A stretch of DNA of 64,000 nt from Octopus sinensis (taxonomy: Eukaryota), in contig NC_043002.1 of NCBI RefSeq assembly GCF_006345805.1, positions 5,766,001 through 5,830,000 on the forward strand, given 5' to 3'. Shown piece after piece: positions 18,014 through 61,195 of this stretch (positions are counted from its first letter, which is position 1; the number at the start of each line of letters is the position of its first letter). The position numbers were made by a program, and so were the translations under genes. The notes under the pieces were generated by a model, which was not told the origin of the DNA, made no database searches, and saw only the letters and a list, made by a program, of their open reading frames with translations.

Positions 18014-18059
<46 letters not shown>

Positions 18060-18303: not shown

Positions 18304-18373
<70 letters not shown>

Positions 18374-20319: not shown

Positions 20320-20346
20320 GTGTATGTATGTATGTATGTATGTATG

Positions 20347-20380
<34 letters not shown>

Positions 20381-28439: not shown

Positions 28440-28742
28440 GGTACTACTAGCGAACAGTGGTCCCGGTGCGCGCACACGTGAAGTCGCGCATCCGCGCTAG
28501 CTAGTCGTAAGTAGTCGATCCTACAACGACTACCTAGCAAAGTAAATAAAACACAAAATAAATAATTTTTTTTACACAAAGTAAATAATTTTTGTTAAAC
28601 AAAGTAAATAAAACACAAAAACACAAAGTAAATAATTTTTTAAACAAAGTAAATAAAACATAAAAACACAAAGTTAGGATCGACTAGTCACGCCTAGCTG
28701 GTGCGGATGCGCGCACCGGGACCACTGTTCTCAAGTAGTACC
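28440..28742. mobile_element. CpG-rich MITE with ~80-bp TIRs and internal A-rich subrepeats
   Basis: GGTACTACT..GAACAGTGGTCCCGGTGCGCGCA...GTCGATCCTA / TAGGATCGAC...TGCGCGCACCGGGACCACTGTTC..AGTAGTACC; flanks GGCTAAAG vs GGCTAGGT (partial 8-bp TSD). Confidence 0.8.
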
Positions 28743-28917
28743 GGCTAGGTAAAGTACCACTCGATTAAATGGGAATCAAACCATGTTATAACTTCACCCC
28801 GAAGCGACAGACGTCCTTGTGGAAAAGCATGAACACCACTCCATCCCATTCCCGTAGAACCCGAACCATTCTTCTCCTAGCAGAAAACTCCAAAGCAACG
28901 CAGTCTCCAGTCTCGGT

Positions 28918-28985
28918 TAAGTTCCCGCGTGACATTTCCTCGCTTCTGATTGGCTAACACCAAATGTGTGGCAAGTTTGAAAACT
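28918..28985 (+). promoter_or_regulatory. Candidate cell-cycle promoter of MELK (E2F + CCAAT + CHR)
   Basis: TTCCCGCG 28922-28929, ATTGG 28949-28953, TTTGAA 28976-28981 within 60 bp; MELK is an E2F/DREAM target in mammals. Confidence 0.55.
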
Positions 28986-29214
28986 TAAACATTATTTGTC
29001 TCTTTCATCATAAACTTACTGGACACTAATTTACCTGTGTGTACATAGACTACCCACCACTCCAGGTAAACCACTACCTATTTCTAATGCTGCTTCACTT
29101 ACTACAACACTGTCTGGTTTATAAATGAAACTCACTCCTTGTTTTGCATACTTTTGTTGTCTCTTTTACATCTTAACAAACATTTTTCAATCCATCTCTC
29201 TTAATTGCCAACAG
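28985..29214 (+). other. MELK: Candidate non-coding first exon of MELK
   Basis: Follows the promoter motifs; donors CAG|GTAAAC (about 29065) and CAG|GTACTT (29214/15). The first coding exon has its own acceptor at 45585, so an upstream UTR exon is required. Confidence 0.4.
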
Positions 29215-31431: not shown

Positions 31432-31659
31432 TTTTTATTGCCCACAAGGGGCTAAACATAGAGGGAACAAACAAGGACAGACAAAGGGATTAAGTCGATT
31501 ACATCGACCCCAGTTTGTAACTGGTCCTTAATTTATCGACCCCGAAAGGATGAAAGGCAAAGTCAACCTCAGCGGAATTTGAACTTAGAACGTAACGGCA
31601 GACGAAATACCGCTAAGTATTTCGCCCAGCGTGCTAATATTTCTGCCAGTTCGCCGCCT
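31432..31659 (-). mobile_element. SINE family B
   Basis: Reverse complement of the consensus. Confidence 0.9.
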
Positions 31660-32581
31660 TATTGGATATATTGTCTAGAATGCCTATACTCATAGGGTTG
31701 CTTGACCTAGGCCAACTTATGAGAAGGGTGAATCCTCTGCAAAATCACAAAGAGATAAATGGTTGTAGTGTTGTCCTGAAAACATGCAGCTTGAGGGTCA
31801 ATCTGGCAGTCCAAATATTGGTAATCATGTGGTCAATGACTGAAGAGACTTTTTACATTTATTCATTCGTTTTGTCTCACTACATTTACTACTGAGTGAA
31901 TTATACCGTTAAACGATGATGATGATAAAATGTCAGTGCTACCTGATATGCAAACCACAGCCATTTTGTGTTGCTGATGGTTAGTGCTACTGCTTTGCTT
32001 TTAGCTCTAAACCTGGAGAAAGAGGTAGTGACCATGGCCTTTGCAGTATCTCTGAGACCTGTCAGATTGATGCTGTTAGTTTTTCACTTTTACAAGTTAA
32101 CAACTACAGAAAACAAAAAAACATAAAGAAGGAAAGAATTCCAGCAGGAGCAAGTATTGAACATAGTCATTAGGACGAGGGTCTCATAAAGCACATTTAT
32201 TGGCCAAAGATTGGAGCATTTTATATGCTGATCACTTGAGTGGCCTTTCTCTAGTTGTTCCCTTGGATGTCTATGTGTACAGCAGCTGCAAGCACCATCC
32301 CAGATAAGGGGCAGGACTTCATTGTGGTTCTCACCTCACTTTTGTAGATCATCAGTCATTGTTGGAACTTGAAGTATTTTCTACTTCTGTTTGCTCAAAT
32401 TTTATTCAAAGATTATTATTGAGTCTTTTAAGTTTTTCGTGATAGTCCAAGACATCCTGAGATTTCATTGTTCTGGTTTTACTTTTTTTTTTCTAACTCA
32501 GAAAATATTTGTTCTTTTGACTGAACACAAAAAATCAGAGATCTACATTTTTGAGAGTGGCAAGGGAAATTTACGACGTTA

Positions 32582-33580
32582 TGTTAGTTAAGTTAAGTTT
32601 AGTTAATTTTTTGGCTCAAAAAGCAAAAAGCAAGGCCATGTAGGGGGACATGGAGTTATGTACAGGGTGGTGTTCATGCAAAGAGTTCAGGCCATTTCTG
32701 GTCAAGAGAGACTTTGAACCGAGCGGTCGTCGGCATCTTCACTATCTCGTCCGGCAGCTTATTCCACAGATCTGCAACCCAGACAGAGAAAGCCCCTCTC
32801 CTTCGATTGAGATGAAATCGTCGCAGATAGAGCTTTTCGGAGTGACCCCGCAGCCGATGCTCTGGAGCAGGAGTGAAGAACAGCTCTTTCGAGAGGTTAC
32901 ACGTTCCGCTTATGATGTTGTGAGCAAGAATGAGATCACCACGGCGTCATCGTTTTTCTAGAGAATAAAGGTCGAGCGTCTTCAGCCTTTCTTCATAAGA
33001 CAAATGCTTGAGACCAAGAACCATGCGGGTAGCCAGCTTCTGGACTCTTTCGAGATGGTGTATGTCTTTGAGGAGATAAGGAGAAGAGGCTTGAATCCCG
33101 TACTCCAATATGGGTTTCACCAGCGTGACATAGAGTGGTAGGAATATGGCTGCTGTGAGCATTCCGAATGACTGTCGAATCAAAAACAGAACTCTGCGTG
33201 CTTTGTTGGCAGCATGGACGCACTGGGCCGAAGGCGAAAAGGAAGAATCCACCAAGATACCCAGGTCCTTTACCTGGTCGGTCCTCTCCAGTAGCAGACG
33301 ACCTGGCTTGAAATCAAGTTGAGTTGCAGGAGAAGAGCCAACAAGCAGATGACAGCACTTTGAAACGTTCAGACACAGGTTCCATTCGTTAGACCATCTC
33401 CAAACTTGGTGGAGGCATCGGCGAAGATCATCTATATCACCGCAAGGAGCAACCAATTTGACATCATCGGCAAATAGTAGGGTGTGTTGCATGAGGTCGT
33501 CGGGCAAGTCATTTATGAAAACTAAGAACAATAAGGGCCCAAGCACTGAACCTTGAGGCACGCCACTGCTAGGATATACT
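32582..33580 (-). mobile_element. CR1-clade LINE, 5'-truncated, young
   Basis: GVPQGSVLGPLLF, FADD, KDLG, LERVQKLAT motifs; one in-frame TGA (32947-32949), frame then continues RRGDLI...WNKLP to stop at 32674; (TAAC/TTAAC)n tail. Confidence 0.95.
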
Positions 33581-34939
33581 CTTTTTTTTTTTTGCATTTC
33601 CAAATATAAAGAAGTGAAACGATTTTAAGCAGGGATCAAGTCTTTGAGCTGAATTTATCAAAGTGCTTCATTCTTTTGTGGTTATCGTGAAGTAGAATGA
33701 GGTGGGGGTAGGGTTCTTTAGTAAATCCAATCTATTCTAGTATATTCTTCTTTCTACTTTGTGCCAGATGGCACAATAAGCTTCCAGTCTCTATCCCTCT
33801 CTCTCGTCCTATTGCACCTGGTCCCATGTTCCCCATCTACTGACCTGCCTCTCTAGTTTAACAGTTCTTCTCCCTTGTGTTCTTGAATCCTCCATGTTTC
33901 CTTCATCCTTCAAGAGTCCATGTATTGTTGGGTTGAGATGTAGTGTAATTGACCCCAAAGCTTAGCTTTCACTCAAGTGCATCATGTTTCTTTCTCTTTC
34001 TAGTTAGGAACCACTGCTTCTCTACCATGTTGTGGATTCTTCTGAATGTTTGAAGTTTCTGTAATAAGAAGTTTCCTTCAGGATCAGGTGATTAGCTCAA
34101 TGCCCAACCTTCAAGATCTGAAGGCAGGATGTGTGTTCTGAGGGTTTCCTCCCTTTGGATAATTGCAATGCTGCCCATGCTCAAGAGCTCTATTTGCCTG
34201 GGAGTCAAAATCAGGGTTTCCTTCTAGGGGATTTTTTGGCTCCCTGTGAAGTGTGTTAGGGTACATAAGAAGTCAGAGGTACATAACGGTAGAATTAGTG
34301 GGAGATGAACCAAGGTTATTGTAGGGATGGTTGCTATTGGCAAAATGAGAGAGGTATATAGGGGAAAGGCAAGGTGGACAGGGCATTCAGTGGCAAATAA
34401 AGTGGTAAGGTATGGTATTGAGAATGCATGAGAAAAAGGAAGTGGTTTCAGGAAGGGTGAGTGATAAGGTGAATGAAATATGTGCAGTCCTCCTACTCTA
34501 ATAGTGACAGCAGCTGAGTGAATAGAACCATAGTTAGAGGAGTGATGGAGGGGTGGGTGTTAGGAAGATGAGTTGTTGGGGTGATGTAGCCGACTGTATT
34601 ATCATTAGTAATATTTTCATAGATATAACAGAATATCTTAAAATATTCTTTTGCCATTTAGAATTCTTCTGAAGTAGCATTTATGTGCTTAAATAATGTG
34701 TCTGTAGAAGAGCAATAAAACCTATCCAAAGCATGTCTGGTGTTGATGAGATCTGTGCTTAGACCATTGCAGAAGAGCTGGGGTGGCTATTAGATACACT
34801 AAATCAGTGTAGGCAAGTCTATTTTAAAAGGGATGCAGTCTAAAATGTGTAGATGTTTGTACAGTTGACTTTGTCCAAATATAATAGCTAAATATATCAG
34901 GGTGTGTGGAATGTAATTGCATTTTACCAGAAAGGATAT

Positions 34940-35790
34940 AAAAACAAATGCAAACTGTGTTTATTTGAATAGTTCTAATCAAGAATGTAATCACCATTGT
35001 TTTTGTCAACTGCCGCCCAATGGGAAAGTAACCTTTTATGTCCAAATGTCTGAATGGCCATTTTCAACTTCCTCTCTGATCTTTTGCCTCTTATATCATG
35101 TTTTAGTGATCGGAACAAATGGAAATCCATAGGGGCCAAGTCAGATGCGTATGAAGGATGTGAAAGAACTTTCCTTTCTAACAATCTTATTTTTTCTTGG
35201 GTTTGTTTTGAAGAATGTTGCCATCCATTGTCATGTTGAAGAATGACACCTTTTCTGATTACTAAAGCTGGCTTTTGACATAATTTTTCATTTACACAAT
35301 CAAGTTGTTGATAATAGACATCTGCATTGATGGTTCTTCTATGTTCCAGTGGCTGTAATGGATGATACCTCTCATGTTCCATCAAACACAAAGCAAGGAT
35401 TTTTGTGGATGGTGTTCTAGTTTTGGCGTTGGCACTAGCCTTTCATTACATAATAACCATTGTCATTTTCATTTTCTGTTATGATGCAAAAATCCATTTT
35501 TCATCACCTGTAACAATACTCAGCAGAAAGGATAGGTTGTTATCAGTGGTTAGAAGACTGCTGTAGATGGTGGAATGTTGTGTTCAGTTCTCAAGCAGAA
35601 GCTCATGTGGATCCCAATGGTAGTTAAATTGACTCAAGATGTTGATAACAATTTCCAGTTCTCATGTGGCAGACTTGAACCTTATTTGAAGATAATACAA
35701 AACAAAATAAAACAAAACTTTCCTCTCATCCATTTTACATCTTCACAATTTAAAATTAAACTTAACAATTCTAGAACCTCTGCTCTTACT
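34940..35790 (-). mobile_element. Decayed mariner transposase
   Basis: VILQHDN...HPSYASDLAPMDFHLFRSL match mariner HDNARPH / HPPYSPDLAPSDF motifs. Confidence 0.85.
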
Positions 35791-36161
35791 TAAGTCCTTC
35801 ACTCCCTATAGAACACAGATCATTGAGTGGCTTTTCTCTATTGTTTTTACATCCTCAAAGTAAGGATTTCTTCTCCTGGACCTTGTTGGTTTTGAATTTT
35901 CACTGATGCTTTTGTGACTTTACTTTTTCTTTAGGTAGGGGTGTTGGTGCTATGCAATTTCATCTTACTTCTGGGATGAGGTGGTCCATATTAGCCTATC
36001 TTCTGTCCTTTGCCAGTTCATCATGAGAAACCCTACCATCAGCTTGAACTCTGCTGGCCTAGCTCTGAGGGTCACTGCAGCCCACAAGCCATCTCACCAT
36101 AACAAAGACTGGGCCTTACTTGTTACTGTTTGCAGGAAATCTAATATAATTTTTTATGATT

Positions 36162-39100
36162 AGCACCCTACGAGCGTGATCATTGACAGAGCGGCTAACC
36201 GGCTTCCGTGCCAGTGGCACTTAAAGGGCACCATTCAAGCATGATCATTACCAGCGTTGCCAGAGCAGCCAACTGGCTTCCGTGCCAGTGGCACTTAAAG
36301 GGCACCATTCAAGCATGATCATTACCAGCGTTGCCAGAGCAGCCAACTGGCTTCCGTGCCAGTGGCACTTAAAGGGCACCATTCAAGCATAATCATTACC
36401 AGCGTTGCCAGAGCAGCCAACTGGCTTCCGTGCCAGTGGCACTTAAAGGGCACCATTCAAGCATGATCATTACCAGCGTTGCCAGAGCAGCCAACTGGCT
36501 TCCGTGCCAGTGGCACTTAAAGGGCACCATTCAAGCATGATCATTACCAGCGTTGCCAGAGCAGCCAACTGGCTTCCGTGCCAGTGGAACGTAATAGGGC
36601 ACCATTCAAGCATGATCATTACCAGCGTTGCCAGAGCAGCCAACTGGCTTCCGTGCCAGTGGCACTTAAAGGGCACCATTCAAGCATGATCATTACCAGC
36701 GTTGCCAGAGCAGCCAACTGGCTTCCGTGCCAGTGGCACTTAAAGGGCACCATTCAAGCATGATCATTACCAGCGTTGCCAGAGCAGCCAACTGGCTTCC
36801 GTGCCAGTGGTACTTAAAGGGCACCATTCAAGCATGATCATTACCAGCGTTGCCAGAGCAGCCAACTGGCTTCCGTGCCAGTGGAACGTAATAGGGCACC
36901 ATTCAAGCATGATCATACCAGCGTTGCCAGAGCAGCCAACTGGCTTCCGTGCCAGTGGCACTTAAAGGGCACCATTCAAGCATATCATTACCAGCGTTGC
37001 CAGAGCAGCCAACTGGCTTCCGTGCCAGTGGCACTTAAAGGGCACCATTCAAGCATGATCATTACCAGCGTTGCCAGAGCAGCCAACTGGTTTCCGTGCC
37101 AGTGGCACTTAAAGGGCACCATTCAAGCATGATCATTACATTACCAGCGTTGCCAGAGCAGCCAACTGGCTTCCGTGCCAGTGGAACGTAATAGGGCACC
37201 ATTCAAGCATGATCATTACCAGCGTTGCCAGAGCAGCCAACTGGCTTCTGTGCCAGTGGCACTTAAAGGGCACCATTCAAGCATGATCATTACCAGCGTT
37301 GCCAGAGCAGCCAACTGGCTTCCGTGCCAGTGGCACTTAAAGGGCACCATTCAAGCATGATCATTACCAGCGTTGCCAGAGCAGCCAACTGGCTTCCGTG
37401 CCAGTGGAACGTAATAGGGCACCATTCAAGCATGATCATTACCAGCGTTGCCAGAGCAGCCAACTGGCTTCCGTGCCAGTGGCACTTAAAGGGCACCATT
37501 CAAGCATGATCATTACCAGCGTTGCCAGAGCAGCCAACTGGCTTCCGTGCCAGTGGCACTTAAGGGCACCATTCAAGCATGATCATTACCAGCGTTGCCA
37601 GAGCAGCCAACTGGCTTCCGTGCCAGTGGCACTTAAAGGGCACCATTCAAGCATGATCATTACCAGCGTTGCCAGAGCAGCCAACTGGCTTCCGTGCCAG
37701 TGGCACTTAAAGGGCACCATTCAAGCATGATCATTACCAGCGTTGCCAGAGCAGCCACTGGCTTCCGTGCCAGTGGCATGTAATAGGGCACCATTCAAGC
37801 ATGATCATTACCAGCGTTGCCAGAGCAGCCAACTGGCTTCCGTGCCAGTGGCACTTAAAGGGCACCATTCAAGCATGATCATTACCAGCGTTGCCAGAGC
37901 AGCCAACTGGCTTCCGTGCCAGTGGCACTTAAAGGCACCATTCAAGCATGATCATTACCAGCGTTGCCAGAGCAGCCAACTGGCTTCCGTGCCAGTGGTA
38001 CTTAAAGGGCACCATTCAAGCATGATCATTACCAGCGTTGCCAGAGCAGCAGCCAACTGGCTGGCTTCCGTGCCAGTGGCACTTAAAGGGCACCATTCAA
38101 GCATGATCATTACCAGTTGCCAGAGCAGCCAACTGGCTTCCGTGCCAGTGGCACTTAAAGGGCACCATTCAAGCATGATCATTACCAGCGCGTTGCCAGA
38201 GCAGCCAACTGGCTTCCGTGCCAGTGGTACTTAAAGGGCACCATTCAAGCATGATCATTACCAGCGTTGCCAGAGCAGCCACTGGCTTCCGTGCCAGTGG
38301 CACTTAAAGGGCACCATTCAAGCATGATCATTACCAGCGTTGCCAGAGCAGCCAACTGGCTCCGTGCCAGTGGCACTTAAAGGGCACCATTCAAGCATGA
38401 TCATTACCAGCGTTGCCAGAGCAGCCAACTGGCTTCCGTGCCAGTGGCACTTAAAGGCACCATTCAAGCATGATCATTACCAGCGTTGCCAGAGCAGCCA
38501 ACTGGCTTCCGTGCCAGTGGCACTTAAAGGGCACCATTCAAGCATGATCATTACCAGCGTTGCCAGAGCAGCCAACTGGCTTCCGTGCCAGTGGCACTTA
38601 AAGGGCACCATTCAAGCATGATCATTACCAGCGTTGCCAGAGCAGCCAACTGGCTTCCGTGCCAGTGGCACTTAAAGGGCACCATTCAAGCATGATCATT
38701 ACCAGCGTTGCCAGAGCAGCCAACTGGCTTCCGTGCCAGTGGCACTTAAAGGGCACCATTCAAGCATGATCATTACCAGCGTTGCCAGAGCAGCCAACTG
38801 GCTTCCGTGCCAGTGGCACTTAAAGGGCACCATTCAAGCATGATCATTACCAGCGTTGCCAGAGCAGCCAACTGGCTTCCGTGCCAGTGGCACGTAATAG
38901 GGCACCATTCAAGCATGATCATTACCAGCGTTGCCAGAGCAGCCAACTGGCTTCCGTGCCAGTGGAACTTAAAGGGCACCATTCAAGCATGATCATTACC
39001 AGCGTTGCCAGAGCAGCCAACTGGCTTCCGTGCCAGTGGAACTTAAAGGGCACCATTCAAGCATGATCATTACCAGCGTTGCCAGAGCAGCCAACTGGCT

Positions 39101-42100
39101 TCCGTGCCAGTGGCACTTAAAGGGCACCATTCAAGCATGATCATTACCAGCGTTGCCAGAGCAGCCAACTGGCTTCCGTGCCAGTGGTACTTAAAGGGCA
39201 CCATTCAAGCATGATCATTACCAGCGTTGCCAGAGCAGCCAACTGGCTTCCGTGCCAGTGGCACTTAAAGGGCACCATTCAAGCATGATCATTACCAGCG
39301 TTGCCAGAGCAGCCAACTGGCTTCCGTGCCAGTGGCACTTAAAGGGCACCATTCAAGCATGATCATTACCAGCGTTGCCAGAGCAGCCAACTGGCTTCCG
39401 TGCCAGTGGCACTTAAAGGGCACCATTCAAGCATGATCATTACCAGCGTTGCCAGAGCAGCCAACTGGCTTCCGTGCCAGTGGTACTTAAAGGGCACCAT
39501 TCAAGCATGATCATTACCAGCGTTGCCAGAGCAGCCAACTGGCTTCCGTGCCAGTGGCACTTAAAGGGCACCATTCAAGCATGATCATTACCAGCGTTGC
39601 CAGAGCAGCCAACTGGCTTCCGTGCCAGTGTACTTAAAGGGCACCATTCAAGCATGATCATTACCAGCGTTGCCAGAGCAGCCAACTGGCTTCCGTGCCA
39701 GTGGCACTTAAAGGGCACCATTCAAGCATGATCATTACCAGCGTTGCCAGAGCAGCCAACTGGCTTCCGTGCCAGTGGCACTTAAAGGGCACCATTCAAG
39801 CATGATCATTACCAGCGTTGCCAGAGCAGCCAACTGGCTTCCGTGCCAGTGGCACTTAAAGGGCACCATTCAAGCATGATCATTACCAGCGTTGCCAGAG
39901 CAGCCAACTGGCTTCCGTGCCAGTGGCACTTAAAGGGCACCATTCAAGCATGATCATTACCAGCGTTGCCAGAGCAGCCAACTGGCTTCCGTGCCAGTGG
40001 CACTTAAAGGGCACCATTCAAGCATGATCATTACCAGCGTTGCCAGAGCAGCCAACTGGCTTCCGTGCCAGTGGCACTTAAAGGGCACCATTCAAGCATG
40101 ATCATTACCAGCGTTGCCAGAGCAGCCAACTGGCTTCCGTGCCAGTGGCACTTAAAGGGCACCATTCAAGCATGATCATTACCAGCGTTGCCAGAGCAGC
40201 CAACTGGCTTCCGTGCCAGTGGCACTTAAAGGGCACCATTCAAGCATGATCATTACCAGCGTTGCCAGAGCAGCCAACTGGCTTCCGTGCCAGTGGCACT
40301 TAAAGGGCACCATTCAAGCATGATCATTACCAGCGTTGCCAGAGCAGCCAACTGGCTTCCGTGCCAGTGGCACTTAAAGGGCACCATTCAAGCATGATCA
40401 TTACCAGCGTTGCCAGAGCAGCCAACTGGCTTCCGTGCCAGTGGCACTTAAAGGGCACCATTCAAGCATGATCATTACCAGCGTTGCCAGAGCAGCCAAC
40501 TGGCTTCCGTGCCAGTGGCACTTAAAGGGCACCATTCAAGCATGATCATTACCAGCGTTGCCAGAGCAGCCAACTGGCTTCCGTGCCAGTGGACTTAAAG
40601 GGCACCATTCAAGCATGATCATTACCAGCGTTGCCAGAGCAGCCAACTGGCTTCCGTGCCAGTGGCACTTAAAGGGCACCATTCAAGCATGATCATTACC
40701 AGCGTTGCCAGAGCAGCCAACTGGCTTCCGTGCCAGTGGCACTTAAAGGGCACCATTCAAGCATGATCATTACCAGCGTTGCCAGAGCAGCCAACTGGCT
40801 TCCGTGCCAGTGGAATAAAGGGCACCATTCAAGCATGATCATTACCAGCGTTGCCAGAGCAGCCAACTGGCTTCCGTGCCAGTGGCACTTAAAGGGCACC
40901 ATTCAAGCATGATCATTACCAGCGTTGCCAGAGCAGCCAACTGGCTTCCGTGCCAGTGGCACTTAAAGGGCACCATTCAAGCATGATCATTACCAGCGTT
41001 GCCAGAGCAGCCAACTGGCTTCCGTGCCAGTGGCACTTAAAGGGCACCATTCAAGCATGATCATTACCAGCGTTGCCAGAGCAGCCAACTGGCTTCCGTG
41101 CCAGTGGCACTTAAAGGGCACCATTCAAGCATGATCATTACCAGCGTTGCCAGAGCAGCCAACTGGCTTCCGTGCCAGTGGCACTTAAAGGGCACCATTC
41201 AAGCATGATCATTACCAGCGTTGCCAGAGCAGCCAACTGGCTTCCGTGCCAGTGGCACTTAAAGGGCACCATTCAAGCATGATCATTACCAGCGTTGCCA
41301 GAGCAGCCAACTGGCTTCCGTGCCAGTGGCACTTAAAGGGCACCATTCAAGCATGATCATTACCAGCGTTGCCAGAGCAGCCAACTGGCTTCCGTGCCAG
41401 TGGCACTTAAAGGGCACCATTCAAGCATGATCATTACCAGCGTTGCCAGAGCAGCCAACTGGCTTCCGTGCCAGTGGCACTTAAAGGGCACCATTCAAGC
41501 ATGATCATTACCAGCGTTGCCAGAGCAGCCAACTGGCTTCCGTGCCAGTGGACACTTAAAGGGCACCATTCAAGCATGATCATTACCAGCGTTGCCAGAG
41601 CAGCCAACTGGCTTCCGTGCCAGTGGCACTTAAAGGGCACCATTCAAGCATGATCATTACCAGCGTTGCCAGAGCAGCCAACTGGCTTCCGTGCCAGTGG
41701 CACTTAAAGGGCACCATTCAAGCATGATCATTACCAGCGTTGCCAGAGCAGCCAACTGGCTTCCGTGCCAGTGGCACTTAAAGGGCACCATTCAAGCATG
41801 ATCATTACCAGCGTTGCCAGAGCAGCCAACTGGCTTCCGTGCCAGTGCACTTAAAGGGCACCATTCAAGCATGATCATTACCAGCGTTGCCAGAGCAGCC
41901 AACTGGCTTCCGTGCCAGTGGCACTTAAAGGGCACCATTCAAGCATGATCATTACCAGCGTTGCCAGAGCAGCCAACTGGCTTCCGTGCCAGTGGCACTT
42001 AAAGGGCACCATTCAAGCATGATCATTACCAGCGTTGCCAGAGCAGCCAACTGGCTTCCGTGCCAGTGGCACTTAAAGGGCACCATTCAAGCATGATCAT

Positions 42101-45100
42101 TACCAGCGTTGCCAGAGCAGCCAACTGGCTTCCGTGCCAGTGGCACTTAAAGGGCACCATTCAAGCATGATCATTACCAGCGTTGCCAGAGCAGCCAACT
42201 GGCTTCCGTGCCAGTGACACTTAAAGGGCACCATTCAAGCATGATCATTACCAGCGTTGCCAGAGCAGCCAACTGGCTTCCGTGCCAGTGGCACTTAAAG
42301 GGCACCATTCAAGCATGATCATTACCAGCGTTGCCAGAGCAGCCAACTGGCTTCCGTGCCAGTGGCACTTAAAGGGCACCATTCAAGCATGATCATTACC
42401 AGCGTTGCCAGAGCAGCCAACTGGCTTCCGTGCCAGTGGCACTTAAAGGGCACCATTCAAGCATGATCATTACCAGCGTTGCCAGAGCAGCCAACTGGCT
42501 TCCGTGCCAGTGGCACTTAAAGGGCACCATTCAAGCATGATCATTACCAGCGTTGCCAGAGCAGCCAACTGGCTTCCGTGCCAGTGGCACTTAAAGGGCC
42601 ATTCAAGCATGATCATTACCAGCGTTGCCAGAGCAGCCAACTGGCTTCCGTGCCAGTGGCACTTAAAGGGCACCATTCAAGCATGATCATTACCAGCGTT
42701 GCCAGAGCAGCCAACTGGCTTCCGTGCCAGTGGGACTTAAGGGCACCATTCAAGCATGATCATTACCAGCGTTGCCAGAGCAGCCAACTGGCTTCCGTGC
42801 CAGTGGCACTTAAAGGGCACCATTCAAGCATGATCATTACCAGCGTTGCCAGAGCAGCCAACTGGCTTCCGTGCCAGTGGCACGTAATAGGGCACCATTC
42901 AAGCATGATCATTACCAGCGTTGCCAGAGCAGCCAACTGGCTTCCGTGCCAGTGGCACTTAAAGGGCACCATTCAAGCATGATCATTACCAGCGTTGCCA
43001 GAGCAGCCAACTGGCTTCCGTGCCAGTGGCACGTAATAGGGCACCATTCAAGCATGATCATTACCAGCGTTGCCAGAGCAGCCAACTGGCTTCCGTGCCA
43101 GTGGCACTTAAAGGGCACCATTCAAGCATGATCATTACCAGCGTTGCCAGAGCAGCCAACTGGCTTCCGTGCCAGTGGCACTTAAAGGGCACCATTCAAG
43201 CATGATCATTACCAGCGTTGCCAGAGCAGCCAACTGGCTTCCGTGCCAGTGGCACTTAAAGGGCACCATTCAAGCATGATCATTACCAGCGTTGCCAGAG
43301 CAGCACTGGCTTCCGTGCCAGTGGCACTTAAAGGGCACCATTCAAGCATGATCATTACCAGCGTTGCCAGAGCAGCCAACTGGCTTCCGTGCCAGTGGCA
43401 CTTAAAGGGCACCATTCAAGCATGATCATTACCAGCGTTGCCAGAGCAGCCAACTGGCTTCCGTGCCAGTGGCACTTAAAGGGCACCATTCAAGCATGAT
43501 CATTACCAGCGTTGCCAGAGCAGCCAACTGGCTTCCGTGCCAGTGGCACTTAAAGGGCACCATTCAAGCATGATCATTACCAGCGTTGCCAGAGCAGCCA
43601 ACTGGCTTCCGTGCCAGTGGCACTTAAAGGGCACCATTCAAGCATGATCATTACCAGCGTTGCCAGAGCAGCCAACTGGCTTCCGTGCCAGTGGCACTTA
43701 AAGGGCACCATTCAAGCATGATCATTACCAGCGTTGCCAGAGCAGCCAACTGGCTTCCGTGCCAGTGGCACTTAAAGGGCACCATTCAAGCATGATCATT
43801 ACCAGCGTTGCCAGAGCAGCCAACTGGCTTCCGTGCCAGTGGCACTTAAAGGGCACCATTCAAGCATGATCATTACCAGCGTTGCCAGAGCAGCCAACTG
43901 GCTTCCGTGCCAGTGGCACTTAAAGGGCACCATTCAAGCATGATCATTACCAGCGTTGCCAGAGCAGCCAACTGGCTTCCGTGCCAGTGGCACTTAAAGG
44001 GCACCATTCAAGCATGATCATTACCAGCGTTGCCAGAGCAGCCAACTGGCTTCCGTGCCAGTGGCACTTAAAGGGCCATTCAAGCATGATCATTACCAGC
44101 GTTGCCAGAGCAGCCAACTGGCTTCCGTGCCAGTGGCACTTAAAGGGCACCATTCAAGCATGATCATTACCAGCGTTGCCAGAGCAGCCAACTGGCTTCC
44201 GTGCCAGTGGCACTTAAAGGGCACCATTCAAGCATGATCATTACCAGCGTTGCCAGAGCAGCCAACTGGCTTCCGTGCCAGTGGACACTTAAAGGGCACC
44301 ATTCAAGCATGATCATTACCAGCGTTGCCAGAGCAGCCAACTGGCTTCCGTGCCAGTGGCACTTAAAGGGCACCATTCAAGCATGATCATTACCAGCGTT
44401 GCCAGAGCAAAGCTGGCCGTGCCAGTGGCACTAAAGGGCACCATTCAAGCATGATCACATACCGCGTGCCAGAGCAGCCAACTGGCTTCCGTGCCAGTGG
44501 CACGTAATAGGGCACCATTCAAGCATGATCATTACCAGCGTTGCCAGAGCAGCCAACTGGCTTCCGTGCCAGTGGCACTTAAAGGGCACCATTCAAGCAT
44601 GATCATTACCAGCGTTGCCAGAGCAGCCAACTGGCTTCCGTGCCAGTGGCACTTAAAGGGCACCATTCAAGCATGATCATTACCAGCGTTGCCAGAGCAG
44701 CCAACTGGCTTCCGTGCCAGTGGCACTTAAAGGGCACCATTCAAGCATGATCATTACCAGCGTTGCCAGAGCAGCCAACTGGCTTCCGTGCCAGTGGCAC
44801 TTAAAGGGCACCATTCAAGCATGATCATTACCAGCGTTGCCAGAGCAGCCAACTGGCTTCCGTGCCAGTGGCACGTAATAGGGCACCATTCAAGCATGAT
44901 CATTACCAGCGTTGCCAGAGCAGCCAACTGGCTTCCGTGCCAGTGGCACTTAAAGGGCACCATTCAAGCATGATCATTACCAGCGTTGCCAGAGCAGCCA
45001 ACTGGCTTCCGTGCCAGTGGCACTTAAAGGGCACCATTCAAGCATGATCATTACCAGCGTTGCCAGAGCAGCCAACTGGCTTCCGTGCCAGTGGCACTTA

Positions 45101-45397
45101 AAGGGCACCATTCAAGCATGAGCGTTACCAAAGTCGCCTTACTGGCACTTGTGCTGGTGGCACGTGTAAAAGGATTCGAGCGAGGTCGTTGCCAGTACTG
45201 CCTGTCTGGCCCCCGTGCCGGTGACACATAAAAAGCACACACTACACTCTCAGTGGTTGGCATTAGGAAGGGCATCCAGCTGTAGAAACTCTGCCAAATC
45301 AAGATTGGAGCCTGGTGCAGCCATCTGGTTTGCCAGACCTCAGTCAAAATCGTCCAACCCATGCTAGCATGGAAAGCAGACGTTAAATGATGATGAT
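36162..45397 (+). mobile_element. RTE-related dispersed repeat copy hosting the satellite
   Basis: Array runs directly into family subrepeats (45120-45235), the core ggcattaggaagggcatccagctgtag and a (GAT)n tail at 45388-45397. Confidence 0.85.
36203..45120 (+). repeat. 74-bp satellite, about 120 near-identical copies
   Basis: Unit TTACCAGCGTTGCCAGAGCAGCCAACTGGCTTCCGTGCCAGTGGCACTTAAAGGGCACCATTCAAGCATGATCA. Confidence 0.98.
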
Positions 45398-45594
45398 CTT
45401 ATTTAGATGATGGGGTGGTAAAAAACAATCCTGCAGAGGCTTAACAGCTATTCATGACACTCCTTTGATAAAATAAGTACCAACATTTTACGGAGGTGAT
45501 TTCATTGACTAAACTCCATTCCCCCTTCAAATTTGTGATGTTGTCCCAACATGAAATCTTAATTGTTTTATGTTTTCCTTTTCAGTGACTTACA

Positions 45595-45652
45595 ATGTCA
45601 CGCTATCAAGAACTTGATGGATTATTCCTGCTGAAGGATACTATTGGCTCTG
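45595..45652 (+). CDS. MELK: MELK coding exon 1 (MSRYQELDGLFLLKDTIGS-G)
   Basis: Acceptor ttttcAG at 45585, ATG 45595, donor GTAAGG; aligns to human [20 protein letters not shown]. Confidence 0.9.
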
Positions 45653-45844: not shown

Positions 45845-46052
45845 ACTCTATTATTATTATTATTATTATTATTATTTTATTATTAGAATTATTATTATAT
45901 TATTTTATTATTAGAATTATTATTATTATTATTTTATTATTAGAATTATTATTATTTTATTATTAGAATTATTATTATTATTATTTTATTATTAGAATTA
46001 TTATTATTATCATTATTATTATTATTATTATTATTATCATTATTATTATTCC
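45845..46052. repeat. (TTA)n microsatellite with ttttattattagaat subunits
   Basis: Direct read. Confidence 0.95.
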
Positions 46053-46159
46053 ACTGTATATTATCTGATAGATGGAAATTACAAGAAGCCCAGTGTGTGT
46101 GTGTGTATGTCATCATCATCATCATCATCATGCAGTGTTTTAAACACAGCTGTCTACAT

Positions 46160-46880
46160 TTTACAGTATGTATTGGATGCTTCTAATGTGACCCTGGTAT
46201 GAGTGATTTTTATGTAGGCCAGTCCTCTTCAGCTGGGGGAGTGGAATTAAACACTTCTGCTGTGGAGGACAGATCTTCTCGAGGACAGCAAGGTGCCAGA
46301 TATCTCTGTCCTTTGTCATTCCCTCCATAAGGTTCAGTGTCATCCTTCAGTCCCATGTCTTCCTAGGCCTCCCTCTTCCACATCTTCCATCCACTTTCAG
46401 TGATTGGTACTCCTGTGTGGAGCTGCTGACATCCATCAGCATCACATGGCCAAACCAGCACAGTCTTCTCTCTTGCACATTGCATCTAATTCCTCTTTTG
46501 CCTAACTTTTCTCTCAACATGTTAGCACTCTGTTGAACATGCATAATTACAATAATTACATTGCACATCGAATGAAGCATACTGGCCTCATCCCCATGTA
46601 GCCTTTGCATGTCCTCTGCATTCAGGGCTAATGTCTCACTACTGTGTAGCATTGCTCTTTGTATACATGCACCATACAATCTTCCCTTCTCTTGAAGAGA
46701 GACATCTTTGGTTGCCAACAGAGGTAAAAGCTCTCCGAATTTTCTCCATCCCATTCTTTTTTTTAGTTATTACAGTTTCCATACATCCCCCCCCACCACT
46801 AATTTGGTCCTCTATGTGACAGAAATTATCCACTACCTCTAATGAGCTTCTGGGGCATTTGAGAAAATCCATTTCCTGAG
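46160..46880 (-). mobile_element. RTE-clade LINE 3' region, decayed
   Basis: WRKF.ELLPLL...KGRLY.AC...LHSSET...RRLCWFGHV...GRGRPRKTW. Confidence 0.85.
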
Positions 46881-47589: not shown

Positions 47590-48115
47590 TTTTGCTGGGG
47601 TGTGCAGGTCTTCCGAAGAACTATACATTGCCAGTCATCCCAGTTCCTTGTCATCTCCGGAGGGTGGAAGATATTAAGCGACTAGAATCCTTCGATCACC
47701 TCTGTCTACGCCGCATCACTTTGCCTCCAACAATTCGGTGCGACACCAGTACAGAATCACCTCCCTCCGACAAGTCATCCTAACAAGACGTGTGCGTTGG
47801 CTGGGTCATGCCCTCCGTCGTCAGCCAGGAGAATTCATCTACGAAGCAATTGCCCCAGCTCCCCTTCAGGGTTGGCGAAAGCGATGTGGTGGACAACGAA
47901 AAGCCTGGCTGATGACAGTCAAAGCTGATCTGGAACCCAACCTAGGCCTCCCCACCCATATCTATGTTGTTCGCCGCTGGAATAAGGAGTGGTTGGAGAT
48001 CACACAGTCAGTAGCCTCAAATCGCCAGGTCTGGTCGGCGTTTGTGAGAGATGCAGCATTGAGGACGAATGAAGCCAGCTCAACCCACCCCGGGTGAATG
48101 CTGTCTCAAGTCAGT
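47590..48115 (+). mobile_element. RTE-clade LINE 3' fragment
   Basis: RLESFDHLCLRRI; RRVRWLGHALRR...GWRKRCGGQRKAW; same family as 5690-5915. Confidence 0.85.
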
Positions 48116-48627
48116 CATCTCCTGTGAGAATCTTAGGGTCTTCACTCCAGTTTTTTGCACTTCATCCCATGTCTTCCTGGATCTCTCTTGTCCACAGTCT
48201 TCGGCACCACATGTCCATACTAGCGCATTCTTTCCTGTACATTACGTCAGATTTCTCTTATGCCCAGTTTTTCTCTGAGCACACTTATACTACATCATTC
48301 ATGCATGCTTACATTGCATGTCTAATGTAACATTGCTTCATTTCTTCCCAGTTTTCATAAGTACTCAGCTTTCAAGGCCCATGTCTTACTACCCTGCAGC
48401 ATTGCAGTTGTATCACAGTCTCCCGTTTACTTTGTAGGAAAAGAATTTGTTGCCAACAGTGACAGTAGCTCCCCGAACTTTCTGAAACCCATTCTTACTT
48501 TGGTTATTATACTTTCAGAGCAACCACCTCCCTTACTGATTACCCCTCTTATGTAGCAAAAGCTATCAACTACATATCGTGAGCCATCCAAGCATTCCAA
48601 CGGAGTCTATTTCCAATGTATTCATAG

Positions 48628-49002
48628 GCACAGGAGTGGCTGTGTGGTAAGTAGCTTGCTCACCAACCACATAGTTCAGGGTTCAGTCCCACTGCGTAGC
48701 ACCTTGGGCAAGTGCTTTCTACTATAGCCTTCGGCTGACCAAAGCCTTGTGAGTGGATTTAGTAGACGGAAACTGAAAGAAGCCCATCGTATATATGTGC
48801 ATGTATATATATATATATGTGTTTGTGTGTCTGTGTTTGTCCCCCCAGCATCGCTTGACAACCAATGCTGGTGTGTTTACGTCCCCGTAACTTAGTGGTT
48901 CAGCAAAAGAGACCGATAGAATAAGTACTAGGGATTGATTTGCCTGACTAAAGGTGGTGCTCCAGCATGGCCACAGTCAAATGACTGAAACAAGTAAAAG
49001 AG
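48628..49002 (+). mobile_element. SINE family A
   Basis: Consensus match. Confidence 0.9.
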
Positions 49003-49554
49003 TATGTCCTACTCCAGTGCATCCATCACATATGAAGCTTATGTCCTCTGCTAGTCTACTTTGGATTCCACTCCATCTCTTCTGTGTTCACAGCTTACAC
49101 TGTGCTCCCCTCCCACTTCTTCTTGAAGGACCATAAACAGGATTTGAATAGGCAGTTATCCATGTAAATGCAATCCTTGTATCTACTGTTATCTGCCTTT
49201 TTTTAAACACACACACACATTTTTGGCTACATTTCTTTTGTGATCTACTTCTTGAAAATTTTGTGCTACTTTATCAGAAATAGATCTGACAACCCTGGAT
49301 CAGACCCTTTAATAGCTGTGCCAAAATTGGTATAAAGTTTTTCATTGTCCGGAGAATACAGGATTCAATATATTGGGTTATTTTCATTTTTTGGTGAGCA
49401 AGTGCTGTGTGCTGTTTTTCTTGGTTTGGGTGTCCATTCTTACTATTAAACCATCACCTCTGGGAACAAAATTGGTGCTTAAATAAACTGAGGCAAGCAT
49501 AATGATAATATACTTTATCTTTTATTACTTTTAATCATTGGACTGTGATCTTCT

Positions 49555-52758: not shown

Positions 52759-53005
52759 TAATACCATAGCATTACCATTGGTGACCTGAACAAAGTCAAC
52801 TGTTACAAGCATTTGGGTCAGGTTTCCAGTGAGAGGTAACTCCATACACTATTTTGTATCACGACAAGAGTTTCCTTTCTCTCACCAGTCTTGGAAGTCC
52901 TGCAAAAGTCATATCCATTGTCTATCGTCTATATTAATTGTACTCAGTATTTTTGATATTATACCCACTGGAGATACAAAAAAAGTTAAACAGATTTAAA
53001 ATAGG

Positions 53006-53402
53006 CGTAGGAGTGGCTGTGTGGTAAGTAGCTTGTTTACCAACCACATGGTTCCGGGTTCAGTCCCACTTACCTTGGGTAAGTGTCTTCTACTATAGCT
53101 TCGGGTTGACCAAAGCCTTGTGAGTGGATTTGGTAGACGGAAACTGAAAGAAGCCTGTCGTATATATGTATATGTCTGTGTATATGTTTGTGTGTCTGTG
53201 TTTGTCCCCCCCAACATCGCTTGACAACCGATGCTGGTATGTTTACGTCCCCGTAACTTTGTGGTCCGGCAAAAGAGACCGATAGAATAAGTACTAGGCT
53301 TCCAAAGAATAAGTCCTGGGGTCGATTTGCTCGACTAAAGGCGGTGCTCCAGCATGGCTGCAGTCAAATGACTGAAACAAATAAAAGAGTAAAGAGTAAG
53401 AG
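53006..53402 (+). mobile_element. SINE family A
   Basis: Consensus match. Confidence 0.9.

Positions 53403-60432: not shown

Positions 60433-61195
<763 letters not shown>

What the first reader, a model, noticed from the sequence alone, without database searches (positions are those of the whole stretch)
36162..45397. Birth of a satellite: 8.9-kb, ~120 x 74-bp array expanded inside one copy of a dispersed retro-element next to the MELK start exon
Seen: other copies of the family (1-355, 9310, 56260, 59915, 60635) carry only a few divergent ~70-75-bp subrepeats before a conserved core and (GAT)n tail. Here one subrepeat is amplified about 120-fold with near identity, runs seamlessly into the normal core, and the tail ends about 190 bp before the MELK acceptor. 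Each unit has a perfect GTGCCA-G-TGGCAC hairpin and a TGATCA palindrome, which could promote slippage or rolling-circle amplification. Inference: this abundant family is a genome-wide seed for locus-specific satellites. If exon 1 is at 29 kb, the array is transcribed in every MELK pre-mRNA and could affect elongation, splicing, chromatin or small-RNA production.
Basis: partly seen in the sequence, partly recalled or inferred. Interest (0 to 1): 0.82.

Follow-up and report, generated by a model that had tools for sequence, protein, structure and literature searches.

The report
LINE-tail subrepeat blown up into array
One truncated copy of a very common octopus LINE retrotransposon, sitting just upstream of the MELK start-codon exon, has had a 74-bp piece of its own internal repeats amplified about 120-fold into a young 8.9-kb tandem array; this is a clean but ordinary example of a transposon-derived minisatellite.

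Summary
A 74-bp unit is repeated 121 times (36183-45130, 97% matches). The array lies inside one copy of a dispersed retro-element and runs without a break into that element's normal subrepeats, core and (GAT)n tail. The tail ends 188 bp before the acceptor of the MELK ATG exon.

The unit is a chimera of two neighbouring family subrepeats (B 5' part plus A2 3' part, joined in a GTYGCC microhomology). This junction occurs 120 times in the array and never in 58 other copies, so the unit formed at this locus. It carries three fixed CpG-to-CpA losses. The array differs from its own consensus by 0.47% in substitutions; the host core differs from its subfamily consensus by 3.9%. Amplification therefore came long after insertion.

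The ends of the array are more heterogeneous than its centre, which fits repeated unequal exchange or slippage. The hairpin is present in nearly all family subrepeats and folding is unremarkable.

The host family occurs in Octopus vulgaris and is best read as the 3' UTR of a LINE, not a SINE. Two more local arrays of the family turned up in 183 kb of O. vulgaris. An intronic position in MELK is plausible; any function is untested. This is a new member of a known kind.

The parts
36162..36227 (+). 5'-truncated start of the host retro-element. This is the unexpanded edge subrepeat 'A1' (GCACCCTACGAGCGTGATCATTGACAGAGCGGCTAACCGG...CACTTAAAGG).
   Evidence: Aligns to the first A-type subrepeat of canonical copies: c329 in the window, and L006 9955-10000 in O. 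vulgaris at 89%. It differs from the array units at 4 of 18 positions in the TTGACAGAGCGGCTAACCGG segment.
36228..45104 (+). The array proper: 120 units of 74 bp. Each is a hybrid of the B-type subrepeat 5' part (GCACCATTCAAGCATGATCATTACCAGC) and the A2-type 3' part (GTTGCCAGAGCAGCCAACTGGCTTCCGTGCCAGTGGCACTTAAAGG). TRF limits are 36183-45130.
   Evidence: period, copy number, diversity; chimeric origin; junction private to this locus; a 44-bp perfect direct repeat brackets the array at 36201 and 45078; zonation.
45105..45234 (+). Unexpanded terminal subrepeats B' (45105-45172) and C (45173-45234) of the host element.
   Evidence: Colinear with the same subrepeats of c9310, c60629, c7229 and c329.
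45235..45386 (+). Conserved 3'-terminal core of the element (GCACACACTACACTCTC...GGAAAGCAGACGTTAA).
   Evidence: BLAST to 14 other copies in the window at 72-94%. Alignment. It differs from the subfamily-I consensus by 3.9% substitutions plus a 2-bp deletion.
45387..45397 (+). Short (GAT)n tail; 3' end of the element.
   Evidence: All 59 sampled copies end here, at reference positions 1047-1061, in a (GAT)n run.
45586..45652 (+). MELK exon carrying the start codon (ATG at 45595; MSRYQELDGLFLLKDTIGSG). It follows a strong polypyrimidine/CAG acceptor and ends at a G|GTAAGG donor. The exon end is approximate to within 2 nt.
   Evidence: It is colinear with seven further kinase-domain exons and with the spliced transcript contig L001 of a relative.
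28680..29065 (+). Candidate MELK promoter and non-coding exon 1: a CpG-rich stretch, CCAAT box (GATTGG) and CHR (TTTGAA) at 28948-28981, and a donor CAG|GTAAAC with GT at 29066. Low confidence.
   Evidence: The pattern GATTGGY-N21-TTYRAA, taken from the relative's 5' UTR (L001), matches once in 64 kb on both strands, against 0.05 expected; 4 of 100 shuffles have a match. Sequence; CpG profile. Against: the UTR alignment is no better than chance, and other CpG-rich stretches exist.

Best explanation
This is a locus-specific, evolutionarily young, minisatellite-type tandem array. It grew out of the internal subrepeats of one 5'-truncated copy of an abundant octopod LINE (non-LTR retrotransposon).

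The LINE's 3' UTR of about 650 bp normally holds 1-5 diverged subrepeats of 62-74 bp, then a core of about 155 bp and a (GAT)n tail. The copy inserted in sense orientation 188 bp upstream of the MELK start-codon exon, most likely inside intron 1. It then aged, losing several CpGs.

An out-of-register exchange or slippage between the short direct repeats GTYGCC in subrepeats B and A2 fused them into a 74-bp hybrid unit. Because the neighbouring subrepeats are similar at the same register, repeated unequal sister-chromatid exchange and/or replication slippage then expanded and homogenised this unit to about 120 copies.

No function need be assumed. The array is most simply a neutral by-product that now makes up about half of the putative 16.5-kb first intron.

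Shown: the anatomy, the chimeric origin, that the junction is private to this locus, that the array is younger than the insertion, the zonation, and the LINE nature of the family. Inferred: the order of events, the exchange mechanism and neutrality.
For: 1. Array statistics: 121 x 74 bp, 97% matches; 78 units identical to the consensus.

2. The host aligns end to end with canonical copies once the array is collapsed.

3. The unit is the B-type 5' 28-34 bp plus the A2-type 3' 40-45 bp. ACCAGCG is diagnostic of the internal B subrepeat, and CAGCCAACTGG of A2.

4. The junction TTACCAGCGTTGCCAGAGCAGCC (up to 4 edits allowed) occurs 120 times in the array. It occurs 0 times in the rest of the window and 0 times in 183 kb of O. 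vulgaris, which together hold 58 other copies.

5. The unit differs from the family subrepeat consensus by three fixed CpG-to-CpA changes (CGAGCG to CAAGCA, ATCG to ATCA), present in essentially all units.

6. Array substitutions are 0.47% from the array's own consensus, and 24 of the 42 fall at two positions. The host core is 3.9% from its subfamily consensus.

7. Non-consensus units make up 19 of 30 in the 5' third, 4 of 30 in the centre and 6 of 15 in the last full block. A two-change variant (GTAATAGGG) and its nested derivative recur every 3-5 units in the 5' zone.

8. A 44-bp perfect direct repeat in 74-bp register brackets the array.

9. Ordinary copies have 1-5 subrepeats. Intermediate expansions exist elsewhere: L007 62 bp x 12.4, running into the core and tail, and L002 137 bp x 5.9.

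10. The family is a LINE 3' end. All 59 copies share one 3' end, while their 5' ends scatter over reference positions 1-926. Copies L006, L010, L007 and L004 continue colinearly across an ORF2 stop codon. L006 and L010 continue into an ORF2 C-terminus (...RLRWYGHVARM...GRGRPRKTWDEV...DR..W...) that is 86% identical between the two loci.

11. The literature describes the same route for other TEs (PMC6947457, PMC10702118, PMC7004042).
Against: - No reads, second assembly or orthologous locus could be examined, so the array length and its single-locus status rest on one assembly.
- Many differences between units are 1-2-bp indels (0.70%) that could be long-read consensus errors, which blurs the diversity estimate.
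- Homogenisation means diversity is not a clock, so 'young' is relative.
- The 44-bp bracketing repeat may be a result of homogenisation rather than its cause.
- Unequal exchange and slippage cannot be told apart from a saltatory mechanism by sequence alone.
- No full-length LINE with a reverse-transcriptase domain attached to this 3' UTR was recovered, so a SINE that shares the LINE tail is not fully excluded.
- Neutrality is assumed, not tested.
Confidence: 0.8

Rival explanations
1. Assembly artefact. The true array is much shorter, or of uncertain length, and the assembler inflated it or looped through it.
For: - Tandem arrays of near-identical units are error-prone in assembly.
- 0.70% of positions are small indels, typical of uncorrected long-read consensus.
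- Only one assembly was available.
Against: - There are 32 distinct unit sequences among the 121 units, and no run of units containing two or more variants is ever repeated, so there is no sign of looping.
- The longest run of pure consensus is 12 units (888 bp), short enough for ordinary long reads to anchor.
- The variants are structured, with nested derivatives and zonation.
- Both junctions with the element are clean and colinear.
Confidence: 0.08
2. Saltatory amplification. The roughly 120 copies arose in one or a few bursts, by rolling-circle replication of an excised circle followed by reintegration, or by break-induced re-replication, perhaps helped by the palindromes.
For: - Identity is very high (78 of 121 units identical) and the centre is almost pure consensus.
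- Palindromes are present in most units.
Against: - The array sits exactly in register inside its parent element with both parental flanks intact. Reintegration of a circle would have to hit that position precisely.
- Variation is zoned, and a complex two-change variant with a nested derivative is shared by 10 or more non-adjacent units. That indicates several rounds of exchange.
- The palindrome is equally present in unexpanded subrepeats.
- Single-stranded DNA folding is not exceptional, z = -1.15.
- Intermediate-size arrays of 12 and 6 copies exist at other loci, which suggests gradual growth.
Confidence: 0.1
3. The host element is a SINE, a pol III-transcribed non-autonomous element that shares the tail of a partner LINE, rather than a truncated LINE. 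The few copies attached to ORF2 sequence would then be the partner LINE itself.
For: - Most copies are short (140-570 bp) and lack coding sequence.
- SINEs are reported as 11.6% of the O. vulgaris genome, mostly 'unclassified' families (PMC13282606).
- The family occurs about once per 4-6 kb in the sampled sequence.
Against: - No tRNA, 5S or 7SL-like head was found by ARAGORN or by Rfam, at either the gathering or a permissive threshold.
- There is no common 5' end: starts scatter over reference positions 1-926.
- Four copies run colinearly over the ORF2 stop codon, and two run into ORF2.
Confidence: 0.15
4. The array is a selected functional element of MELK, for example an intronic enhancer or silencer, a transcription-factor sink, a heterochromatin or small-RNA source, or a brake on elongation.
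For: - It lies 188 bp from the start-codon exon, probably inside intron 1, in sense orientation.
- It holds 116 copies of CAACTG, a Myb-site/E-box-like hexamer, next to a gene with a CCAAT/CHR-type candidate promoter. This is only a motif count.
Against: - There is no evidence of constraint.
- The unit is a decayed TE fragment whose defining changes are CpG losses.
- Similar arrays of the family occur at unrelated loci.
- No expression, chromatin or comparative data were available.
Confidence: 0.05

Closest known systems
SINE-derived satellites (sSats) of squamate reptiles (Vassetzky et al. 2023, PMC10702118)
   Same: - Tandem arrays are built from an internal portion of a short retroposon.
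- A longer terminal unit continues to the element's own end.
- Many independent loci exist, with anything from a few up to about 1000 units.
- Longer arrays are more homogeneous.
- The proposed route is a first duplication followed by unequal recombination.
   Different: - Here the parent is the 3' UTR of a LINE in an octopod.
- The unit comes from pre-existing subrepeats (74 bp) rather than from unique SINE sequence.
- Only one locus with this unit is known.
- The position is intragenic, next to a start-codon exon, not subtelomeric (the chromosomal position here is unknown).
Satellites derived from tandem repeats inside LTR retrotransposons (Ogre and others) in Lathyrus sativus (Vondrak et al. 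2020, PMC7004042)
   Same: A dispersed retrotransposon carries a short array of subrepeats in its untranslated region, and this array occasionally expands in length at particular loci.
   Different: - That case involves plant LTR elements, and expansion occurs mainly in pericentromeric regions.
- Here the parent is a non-LTR element in an animal, the array is in a gene intron, and the unit is a new hybrid of two subrepeats.
Alu/B1/MaLR-derived minisatellites and the Haber-Louis model (reviewed in Paco et al. 2019, PMC6947457)
   Same: The first duplication occurs between very short direct repeats (5-10 bp) flanking the future unit. Here that is GTYGCC, 6 bp. [quoted passage not shown] The unit size is in the minisatellite range.
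   Different: The array is unusually long for a minisatellite (8.9 kb, 121 units), and its seed was already a degenerate tandem repeat.
VNTR region of hominid SVA retrotransposons (from my own knowledge, not checked here)
   Same: A composite non-LTR retroposon with an internal array of subrepeats of a few tens of bp. Copy number changes locally, and the array can sit in introns of genes.
   Different: The SVA VNTR varies by units to tens of units and also travels with retrotransposition. Here the expanded junction is absent from all other copies, so the expansion happened after insertion and is not mobile.
PcH-Sat satellite of the limpet Patella caerulea, proposed to derive from a Nin-SINE (PMC11121367; title and abstract only)
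   Same: A mollusc tandem repeat traced to a short retroposon.
   Different: PcH-Sat is an abundant genome-wide satellite whose TE origin is inferred from similarity. Here both the parent copy and its flanks are still in place.

Membership tests
TE-derived tandem array (minisatellite/satellite born inside a transposable element) | The units are homologous to an internal segment of a dispersed element. | tested here: met
   The unit aligns to A- and B-type subrepeats of five other copies. BLAST identity reaches 90% (window 226-304).
TE-derived tandem array (minisatellite/satellite born inside a transposable element) | The array is flanked, in colinear order, by the remaining parts of the same element copy. 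| tested here: met
   A1 lies on the 5' side. B', C, the core and the (GAT)n tail lie on the 3' side.
TE-derived tandem array (minisatellite/satellite born inside a transposable element) | Copy number is far above that of ordinary copies. | tested here: met
   121 units here, against 1-5 subrepeats in 58 other copies. One copy has 12.
Satellite DNA in the strict sense | The same unit is present in long arrays at many loci, or at high genomic abundance. | not testable with these tools
   No eukaryotic genome could be searched by DNA. The junction is absent from the rest of the window and from 183 kb of O. vulgaris. Pattern scans of metagenome, prokaryote-genome and viral collections found nothing. 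The array translation hit only an ordinary copy.
Minisatellite / VNTR | Unit of 10-100 bp in a head-to-tail array of 0.5 kb to tens of kb. | tested here: met
   74 bp x 121 = 8.9 kb.
Minisatellite / VNTR | Allele-length polymorphism in the population. | not testable with these tools
   Only a single haplotype sequence is available.
SINE | 5' head derived from tRNA, 5S or 7SL RNA, with an internal pol III promoter. | tested here: not met
   ARAGORN found 0 genes in the window. Rfam gave no hit on any copy at the gathering threshold or at a permissive threshold.
SINE | A defined common 5' end and no coding sequence. | tested here: not met
   5' ends scatter over reference positions 1-926. Copies L006 and L010 extend into ORF2, and L004 and L007 reach its stop codon.
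LINE (non-LTR retrotransposon), 3'-terminal fragment | A common 3' end with a simple-repeat or A-rich tail, and variable 5' truncation. | tested here: met
   All 59 copies end at reference positions 1047-1061 in a (GAT)n run. Their 5' starts are spread widely.
LINE (non-LTR retrotransposon), 3'-terminal fragment | Longer copies continue upstream into ORF2. | tested here: met
   L006 9515-9793 and L010 10827-10702 encode homologous ORF2 C-termini (86% aa identity), followed by a stop codon and the same 3' UTR. A related ORF2 C-terminus lies at window 46272-46754 (-) (53% aa identity).
LINE (non-LTR retrotransposon), 3'-terminal fragment | A reverse-transcriptase or endonuclease domain in a full-length member, which would also assign the clade. 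| tested here: inconclusive
   No full-length copy lies in the 247 kb sampled. Pfam finds nothing in the C-terminal fragments. The C-terminal motif resembles RTE-type and related clades only from memory.
LINE (non-LTR retrotransposon), 3'-terminal fragment | Target-site duplications. | tested here: inconclusive
   No convincing duplication of 6 bp or more flanks any of 15 copies. Some LINE clades make none, so this neither supports nor excludes membership.
MELK (maternal embryonic leucine zipper kinase) gene | Colinear exons encoding the MELK-type kinase domain, with best protein matches to MELK orthologues. | tested here: met
   Eight exons at 45-74% identity to human MELK. The top database hits are named MELK in many animals; the best is 88% identical, from a Logan transcript assembly.

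The most novel reading that the evidence does not exclude
Two readings remain open.

1. This LINE family, through the self-similar subrepeats in its 3' UTR, may systematically generate young locus-specific arrays across octopod genomes. In the sample, three arrays appeared among about 55 independent copies. Such arrays could feed a 'library' from which true satellites arise.

2. The MELK array, with 116 CAACTG motifs over half of the probable first intron of a cell-cycle kinase gene, may measurably alter MELK transcription, chromatin or small-RNA output in an allele-length-dependent way.
Probability: 0.07. Interest if true: 0.6.

Novelty: new member of a known kind. Interest (0 to 1): 0.3.

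Why it matters
This is an unusually legible snapshot of how a tandem array is born from a transposable element. The parent copy, both of its flanks, the exact hybrid junction, the microhomology, the mutations that predate amplification and the internal zonation can all still be read. Smaller sister arrays at 12 and 6 copies exist at other loci.

It also corrects the likely annotation of a very abundant octopus repeat, from SINE-like to LINE 3' UTR. It flags a family that may inflate tandem-repeat content and cause assembly trouble in cephalopod genomes.

For MELK itself, the practical consequence is a probable first intron that is half repeat. This is worth knowing for gene models and for any allele-length study. 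Nothing found here suggests a new kind of mechanism.

Tried and rejected
1. tRNA, 5S or 7SL head: ARAGORN and Rfam (gathering threshold on the whole window, permissive threshold on 55.5-64 kb) found nothing on the copies.

2. Target-site duplications: none convincing for 15 copies.

3. Strict higher-order repeat in the array: none. There is only a loose 3-5-unit recurrence of one variant in the 5' zone.

4. Hairpin-driven instability: folding a dimer as single-stranded DNA gives z = -1.15, and the palindrome is a feature of the whole family.

5. Locating exon 1 by aligning the relative's transcript: the coding exons align at 73-88%, but the 5' UTR aligns no better than shuffles or other parts of the window. 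Only the CCAAT-N22-CHR module is shared.

6. Finding the family or the array by DNA pattern in the metagenome, prokaryotic-genome and viral collections: 0 hits in four scans.

7. Literal sequence strings in the literature: 0 papers.

8. Finding the orthologous MELK locus: no Octopus MELK protein was returned; the best hit is 88% identical, from a 1.3-kb transcript contig. L005 has a kinase gene but is not orthologous.

9. Searching proteins with a translation of the array: the only hit (P0130) is an ordinary unexpanded copy at L006. That copy did, however, reveal the LINE ORF2 link.

10. My first working label, 'SINE', was dropped.

11. Assembler looping: no repeated order of variant units.

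12. Pfam on five TE-like ORFs: only 32947-33603 (-) hits RVT_1.
Full report
OBSERVATION

Tandem Repeats Finder reports one outstanding array in the window: 36183-45130, period 74, 121.0 copies, 97% matches, score 17177. The window has no N. My segmentation gives 121 units. Of these, 78 equal the consensus; 42 substitutions fall in 8954 aligned positions (0.47%), and there are 63 indel positions (0.70%). GC content rises to 0.53-0.54 across the array against 0.27-0.46 elsewhere.

The array's 3' side continues without a break into two ordinary subrepeats, a conserved core and a short (GAT)n run that ends at 45397. The next feature is a polypyrimidine/CAG acceptor with AG at 45584-45585. It is followed by TGACTTACA-ATG and an open frame MSRYQELDGLFLLKDTIGSG that ends at a GTAAGG donor. 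The tail ends 188 bp before this exon.

A protein search with the joined exons returns MELK orthologues from many animals. The best is 88% identical, from a Logan transcript contig, L001. The only small corrections are that the 13-nt palindrome is perfect in 101 of 121 units and TGATCA is present in 119, and that the window holds about 15 copies of the dispersed family rather than five.

WHAT THE UNIT IS

With the array collapsed, the host element aligns end to end with canonical copies at 9311-9777, 60629-61197, 7236-6938 (-) and 355-1 (-). The family's 5' part is a short run of diverged subrepeats, each with the pattern GCACCAT.CGAGCGTGATCGTT.CCAG...CTGGC...GTGCC.GTGGCAC.TAAAA. In the host's subfamily, two types (A and B) alternate in the order A1-B-A2-B'-C-core.

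The 74-bp unit is a hybrid. Its first 28-34 bp are of the internal-B type (CATTC..., ACCAGCG). Its last 40-45 bp are of the A2 type (AGAGCAGCCAACTGG...CACTTAAAGG). The joint lies in the hexamer GTYGCC, which both subrepeats contain but out of register by 9 bp. This is why the unit is 74 bp and not 65 bp.

The host now reads A1 (36163-36227), 120 hybrids (36228-45104), B', C, core and tail. The junction string TTACCAGCGTTGCCAGAGCAGCC, allowing 4 edits, occurs 120 times in the array. It never occurs in the rest of the window, nor in nine 20-kb loci of Octopus vulgaris that together hold 44 further copies. The unit was therefore made at this locus and is not a variant that travels with the element.

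RELATIVE TIMING

Compared with the family subrepeat consensus, the unit has CGAGCG changed to CAAGCA and ATCG changed to ATCA. These are three CpG-to-CpA changes, shared by essentially all units and so older than the amplification.

The host's own core differs from a consensus of five subfamily-I copies by 6 of 153 substitutions (3.9%) plus a 2-bp deletion. About half of these changes are at CpG sites, and this divergence is like that of the other copies (3.9-6.2%). The array differs from its own consensus by 0.47%, and 24 of the 42 substitutions sit at two positions as shared variants.

Published calibrations for octopus TEs are JC 0.065 = 18 My, 0.09 = 25 My and 0.2 = 56 My (PMC13282606, citing Albertin et al. 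2015). On that scale the insertion would be roughly 10 My old, and the last homogenisation of the array about 1 My or less. This is only an order-of-magnitude statement. The source species is unknown, homogenisation resets diversity, and some differences may be sequencing errors.

HOW IT GREW

Non-consensus units are 19 of 30 in the first third, 4 of 30 in the centre and 6 of 15 in the last full block. A complex variant (T to G plus an inserted T, giving GTAATAGGG) is found in at least ten non-adjacent units. In the 5' zone it recurs every 3-5 units and carries a nested C-to-A derivative that is found only there. There is no strict higher-order repeat.

Heterogeneous ends, a homogeneous centre and nested shared variants are what repeated unequal exchange or slippage produces. 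A single burst would give a star-like pattern of singleton variants. The array is bracketed by a 44-bp perfect direct repeat in 74-bp register, at 36201 and 45078. That is an ideal substrate for such exchange, although it may itself be a product of homogenisation.

The hairpin idea did not survive testing. GTGCC-N-GTGGCAC is in nearly every subrepeat of every copy. A 6-bp stem with a 1-nt loop cannot form. A dimer folded as single-stranded DNA is no more stable than shuffles (z = -1.15).

WHAT THE HOST FAMILY IS

I first took it for a SINE. No tRNA, 5S or 7SL-like head is detectable, and no target-site duplications are seen.

The antisense strand of copy 56279 is open throughout. Its translation hit nine 'hypothetical proteins', all from the Octopus vulgaris chromosome assembly GCA_951406725.2. 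This places the window in an octopod and gave access to nine independent 20-kb loci.

In L006 the element is preceded, in the same orientation, by a decayed ORF2 C-terminus (...RLRWYGHVARM...GRGRPRKTWDEVVKHD...DRHFWKYAVCEKTWKAK*). This is homologous to the LINE ORF at window 46272-46754 (-). L010 has the same arrangement, with 86% amino-acid identity. L004 and L007 start within a few codons of the same stop codon.

Using L006 9400-10460 as a reference, all 59 core-anchored copies in 247 kb end at reference positions 1047-1061, while their 5' ends scatter from 1 to 926. This is the truncation profile of a LINE whose 3' UTR of about 650 bp carries the subrepeats. I could not recover a full-length member or assign a clade. 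Pfam is silent on the C-terminal fragments. A SINE that shares this tail remains a minor possibility.

IS THE FAMILY A RECURRENT SEED?

Ordinary copies show 1-5 subrepeats. Two bystander arrays appeared in the 183 kb of O. vulgaris. At L007 16163-16933, a 62-bp subrepeat of a subfamily-II copy is amplified to 12.4 copies (94% matches) and runs straight into the core and tail. At L002 3682-4496, the last 137 bp of a copy (half the core plus the tail) is repeated 5.9 times at 97%.

Neither array is the copy through which its locus was retrieved. The MELK array is the extreme of a distribution.

POSITION RELATIVE TO MELK

The ATG exon has a strong acceptor, so at least one upstream exon is expected. 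The 5' UTR of the relative's transcript (L001) contains GATTGGT-N21-TTTAAA, a CCAAT box plus a CHR-like element. This arrangement is typical of G2/M genes (my knowledge, not checked here).

The derived pattern GATTGGY-N21-TTYRAA matches once in the window on either strand, at 28948-28981 (+), against 0.05 expected; 4 of 100 shuffles have a match. It follows a CpG-rich stretch and precedes a CAG|GTAAAC donor at 29066. The rest of the UTR does not align better than chance, and other CpG-rich stretches exist, so this is a candidate only.

If it is right, intron 1 is about 16.5 kb (29066-45585) and the array makes up 54% of it. The element is in sense orientation. The array has one AATAAA, no ATTAAA and no consensus donor, so by simple motif criteria it should be tolerated. 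Any effect on MELK is untested.

COMPARISON AND VERDICT

The route is well documented: a short direct repeat inside a TE, a first duplication, then growth by slippage or unequal crossing-over (review PMC6947457). The architecture, an array with a longer terminal unit that continues to the element's end, is that of the SINE-derived satellites of squamates (PMC10702118). The logic of short TE-internal arrays that occasionally expand is that of Lathyrus retrotransposon-derived satellites (PMC7004042). A mollusc satellite with a SINE origin has also been proposed (PMC11121367). The recent detailed repeat annotation of O. vulgaris does not mention satellites or such arrays (PMC13282606).

I therefore file this as a new member of a known kind. 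It is a large, young, LINE-3'-UTR-derived minisatellite-type array in the probable first intron of MELK. It is real as far as the sequence can show, is well explained by ordinary mechanisms, and is of moderate-to-low general interest.

The main uncertainties are the true length, the single-locus status, the position of exon 1 and the clade of the LINE. All can be resolved with reads, a genome-wide repeat scan and RNA data.

Noticed in passing
L007 16163-16933 (O. vulgaris OX597839.1), minus strand: A 62-bp subrepeat of a subfamily-II copy of the same LINE family is amplified to about 12 copies (94% matches) and runs directly into the core and (GAT)n tail. It is a smaller sibling of the MELK array.
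   Followed up: partly
L002 3682-4496 (O. vulgaris OX597840.1), minus strand; also L002 9951-10242: A tandem array of 137 bp x 5.9 (97% matches) made of the 3' half of the core plus the (GAT)n tail of a family copy. A second array, 156 bp x 1.9, lies nearby. This is a different part of the element amplified locally.
   Followed up: partly
window 46100-46754 (-), 48113-48492 (-), 47738-48097 (+): Fragments of a related LINE lie in MELK intron 2. The ORF2 C-terminus (...RRLCWFGHVMLMD...GRGRPRKTWD) is 53% identical to that of the host family. It has its own short 3' UTR and an (ATG/GAT)n tail at 46100-46125. It may belong to the same LINE group, with the same type of tail.
   Followed up: partly
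window 62427-62642: A long, nearly perfect hairpin matches several plant MIR precursor models on both strands, well below their gathering scores (best 62 bits against 160). It looks like a MITE or foldback element in a MELK intron, not a miRNA gene.
   Followed up: no
window 6241-6638, 52994-53393, 2612-2972, 48631-49004; many copies in L002, L004, L005: A second abundant dispersed repeat of about 400 bp, 83-89% identical between the window and O. vulgaris. A stretch seen at L002 4720-4860 resembles the CORE domain of MIR/OR-type SINEs. That resemblance is from memory only.
   Followed up: no
window 32947-33603 (-), 34975-35391 (-), 54920-55369 (-): Other TE remnants. One is a reverse-transcriptase fragment (Pfam RVT_1, E = 1e-14). 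One is an ORF with a mariner-like transposase C-terminal motif (from memory; no Pfam hit). One is a CR1/L2-like ORF2 C-terminus (from memory; no Pfam hit).
   Followed up: partly
window 26239-27584, 20321-20745, 12861-13302, 18014-18373, 45849-46050: Very long microsatellites: (TGTA)n of 1.35 kb and 0.4 kb, (TA)n of about 0.4 kb twice, and (TAT)n of 0.2 kb just downstream of the MELK ATG exon. The (TGTA)n causes a strong local GC-skew peak (0.56).
   Followed up: no
window 28948-28981 (+) and L001 about 131-170: A CCAAT box and a CHR-like element separated by 22 nt (the pattern's Y plus N21) in both the window and a distant relative's MELK 5' UTR, although the surrounding sequence has diverged beyond alignment. 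This may be a conserved cell-cycle promoter module.
   Followed up: partly
L008 9-1511, 8230-9953, 14980-17105; L007 10918-11926: Long arrays with 84-bp period (72% matches) lie inside annotated O. vulgaris 'genes' that have no Pfam hit on record. 84 bp equals 28 codons, the period of C2H2 zinc-finger arrays. L007 has arrays of 81, 171 and 342 bp inside an 842-aa model.
   Followed up: no
window 19369-20106: A 383-bp unit repeated 1.9 times (81%), with an internal 175-bp periodicity. It is unrelated to the LINE family.
   Followed up: no
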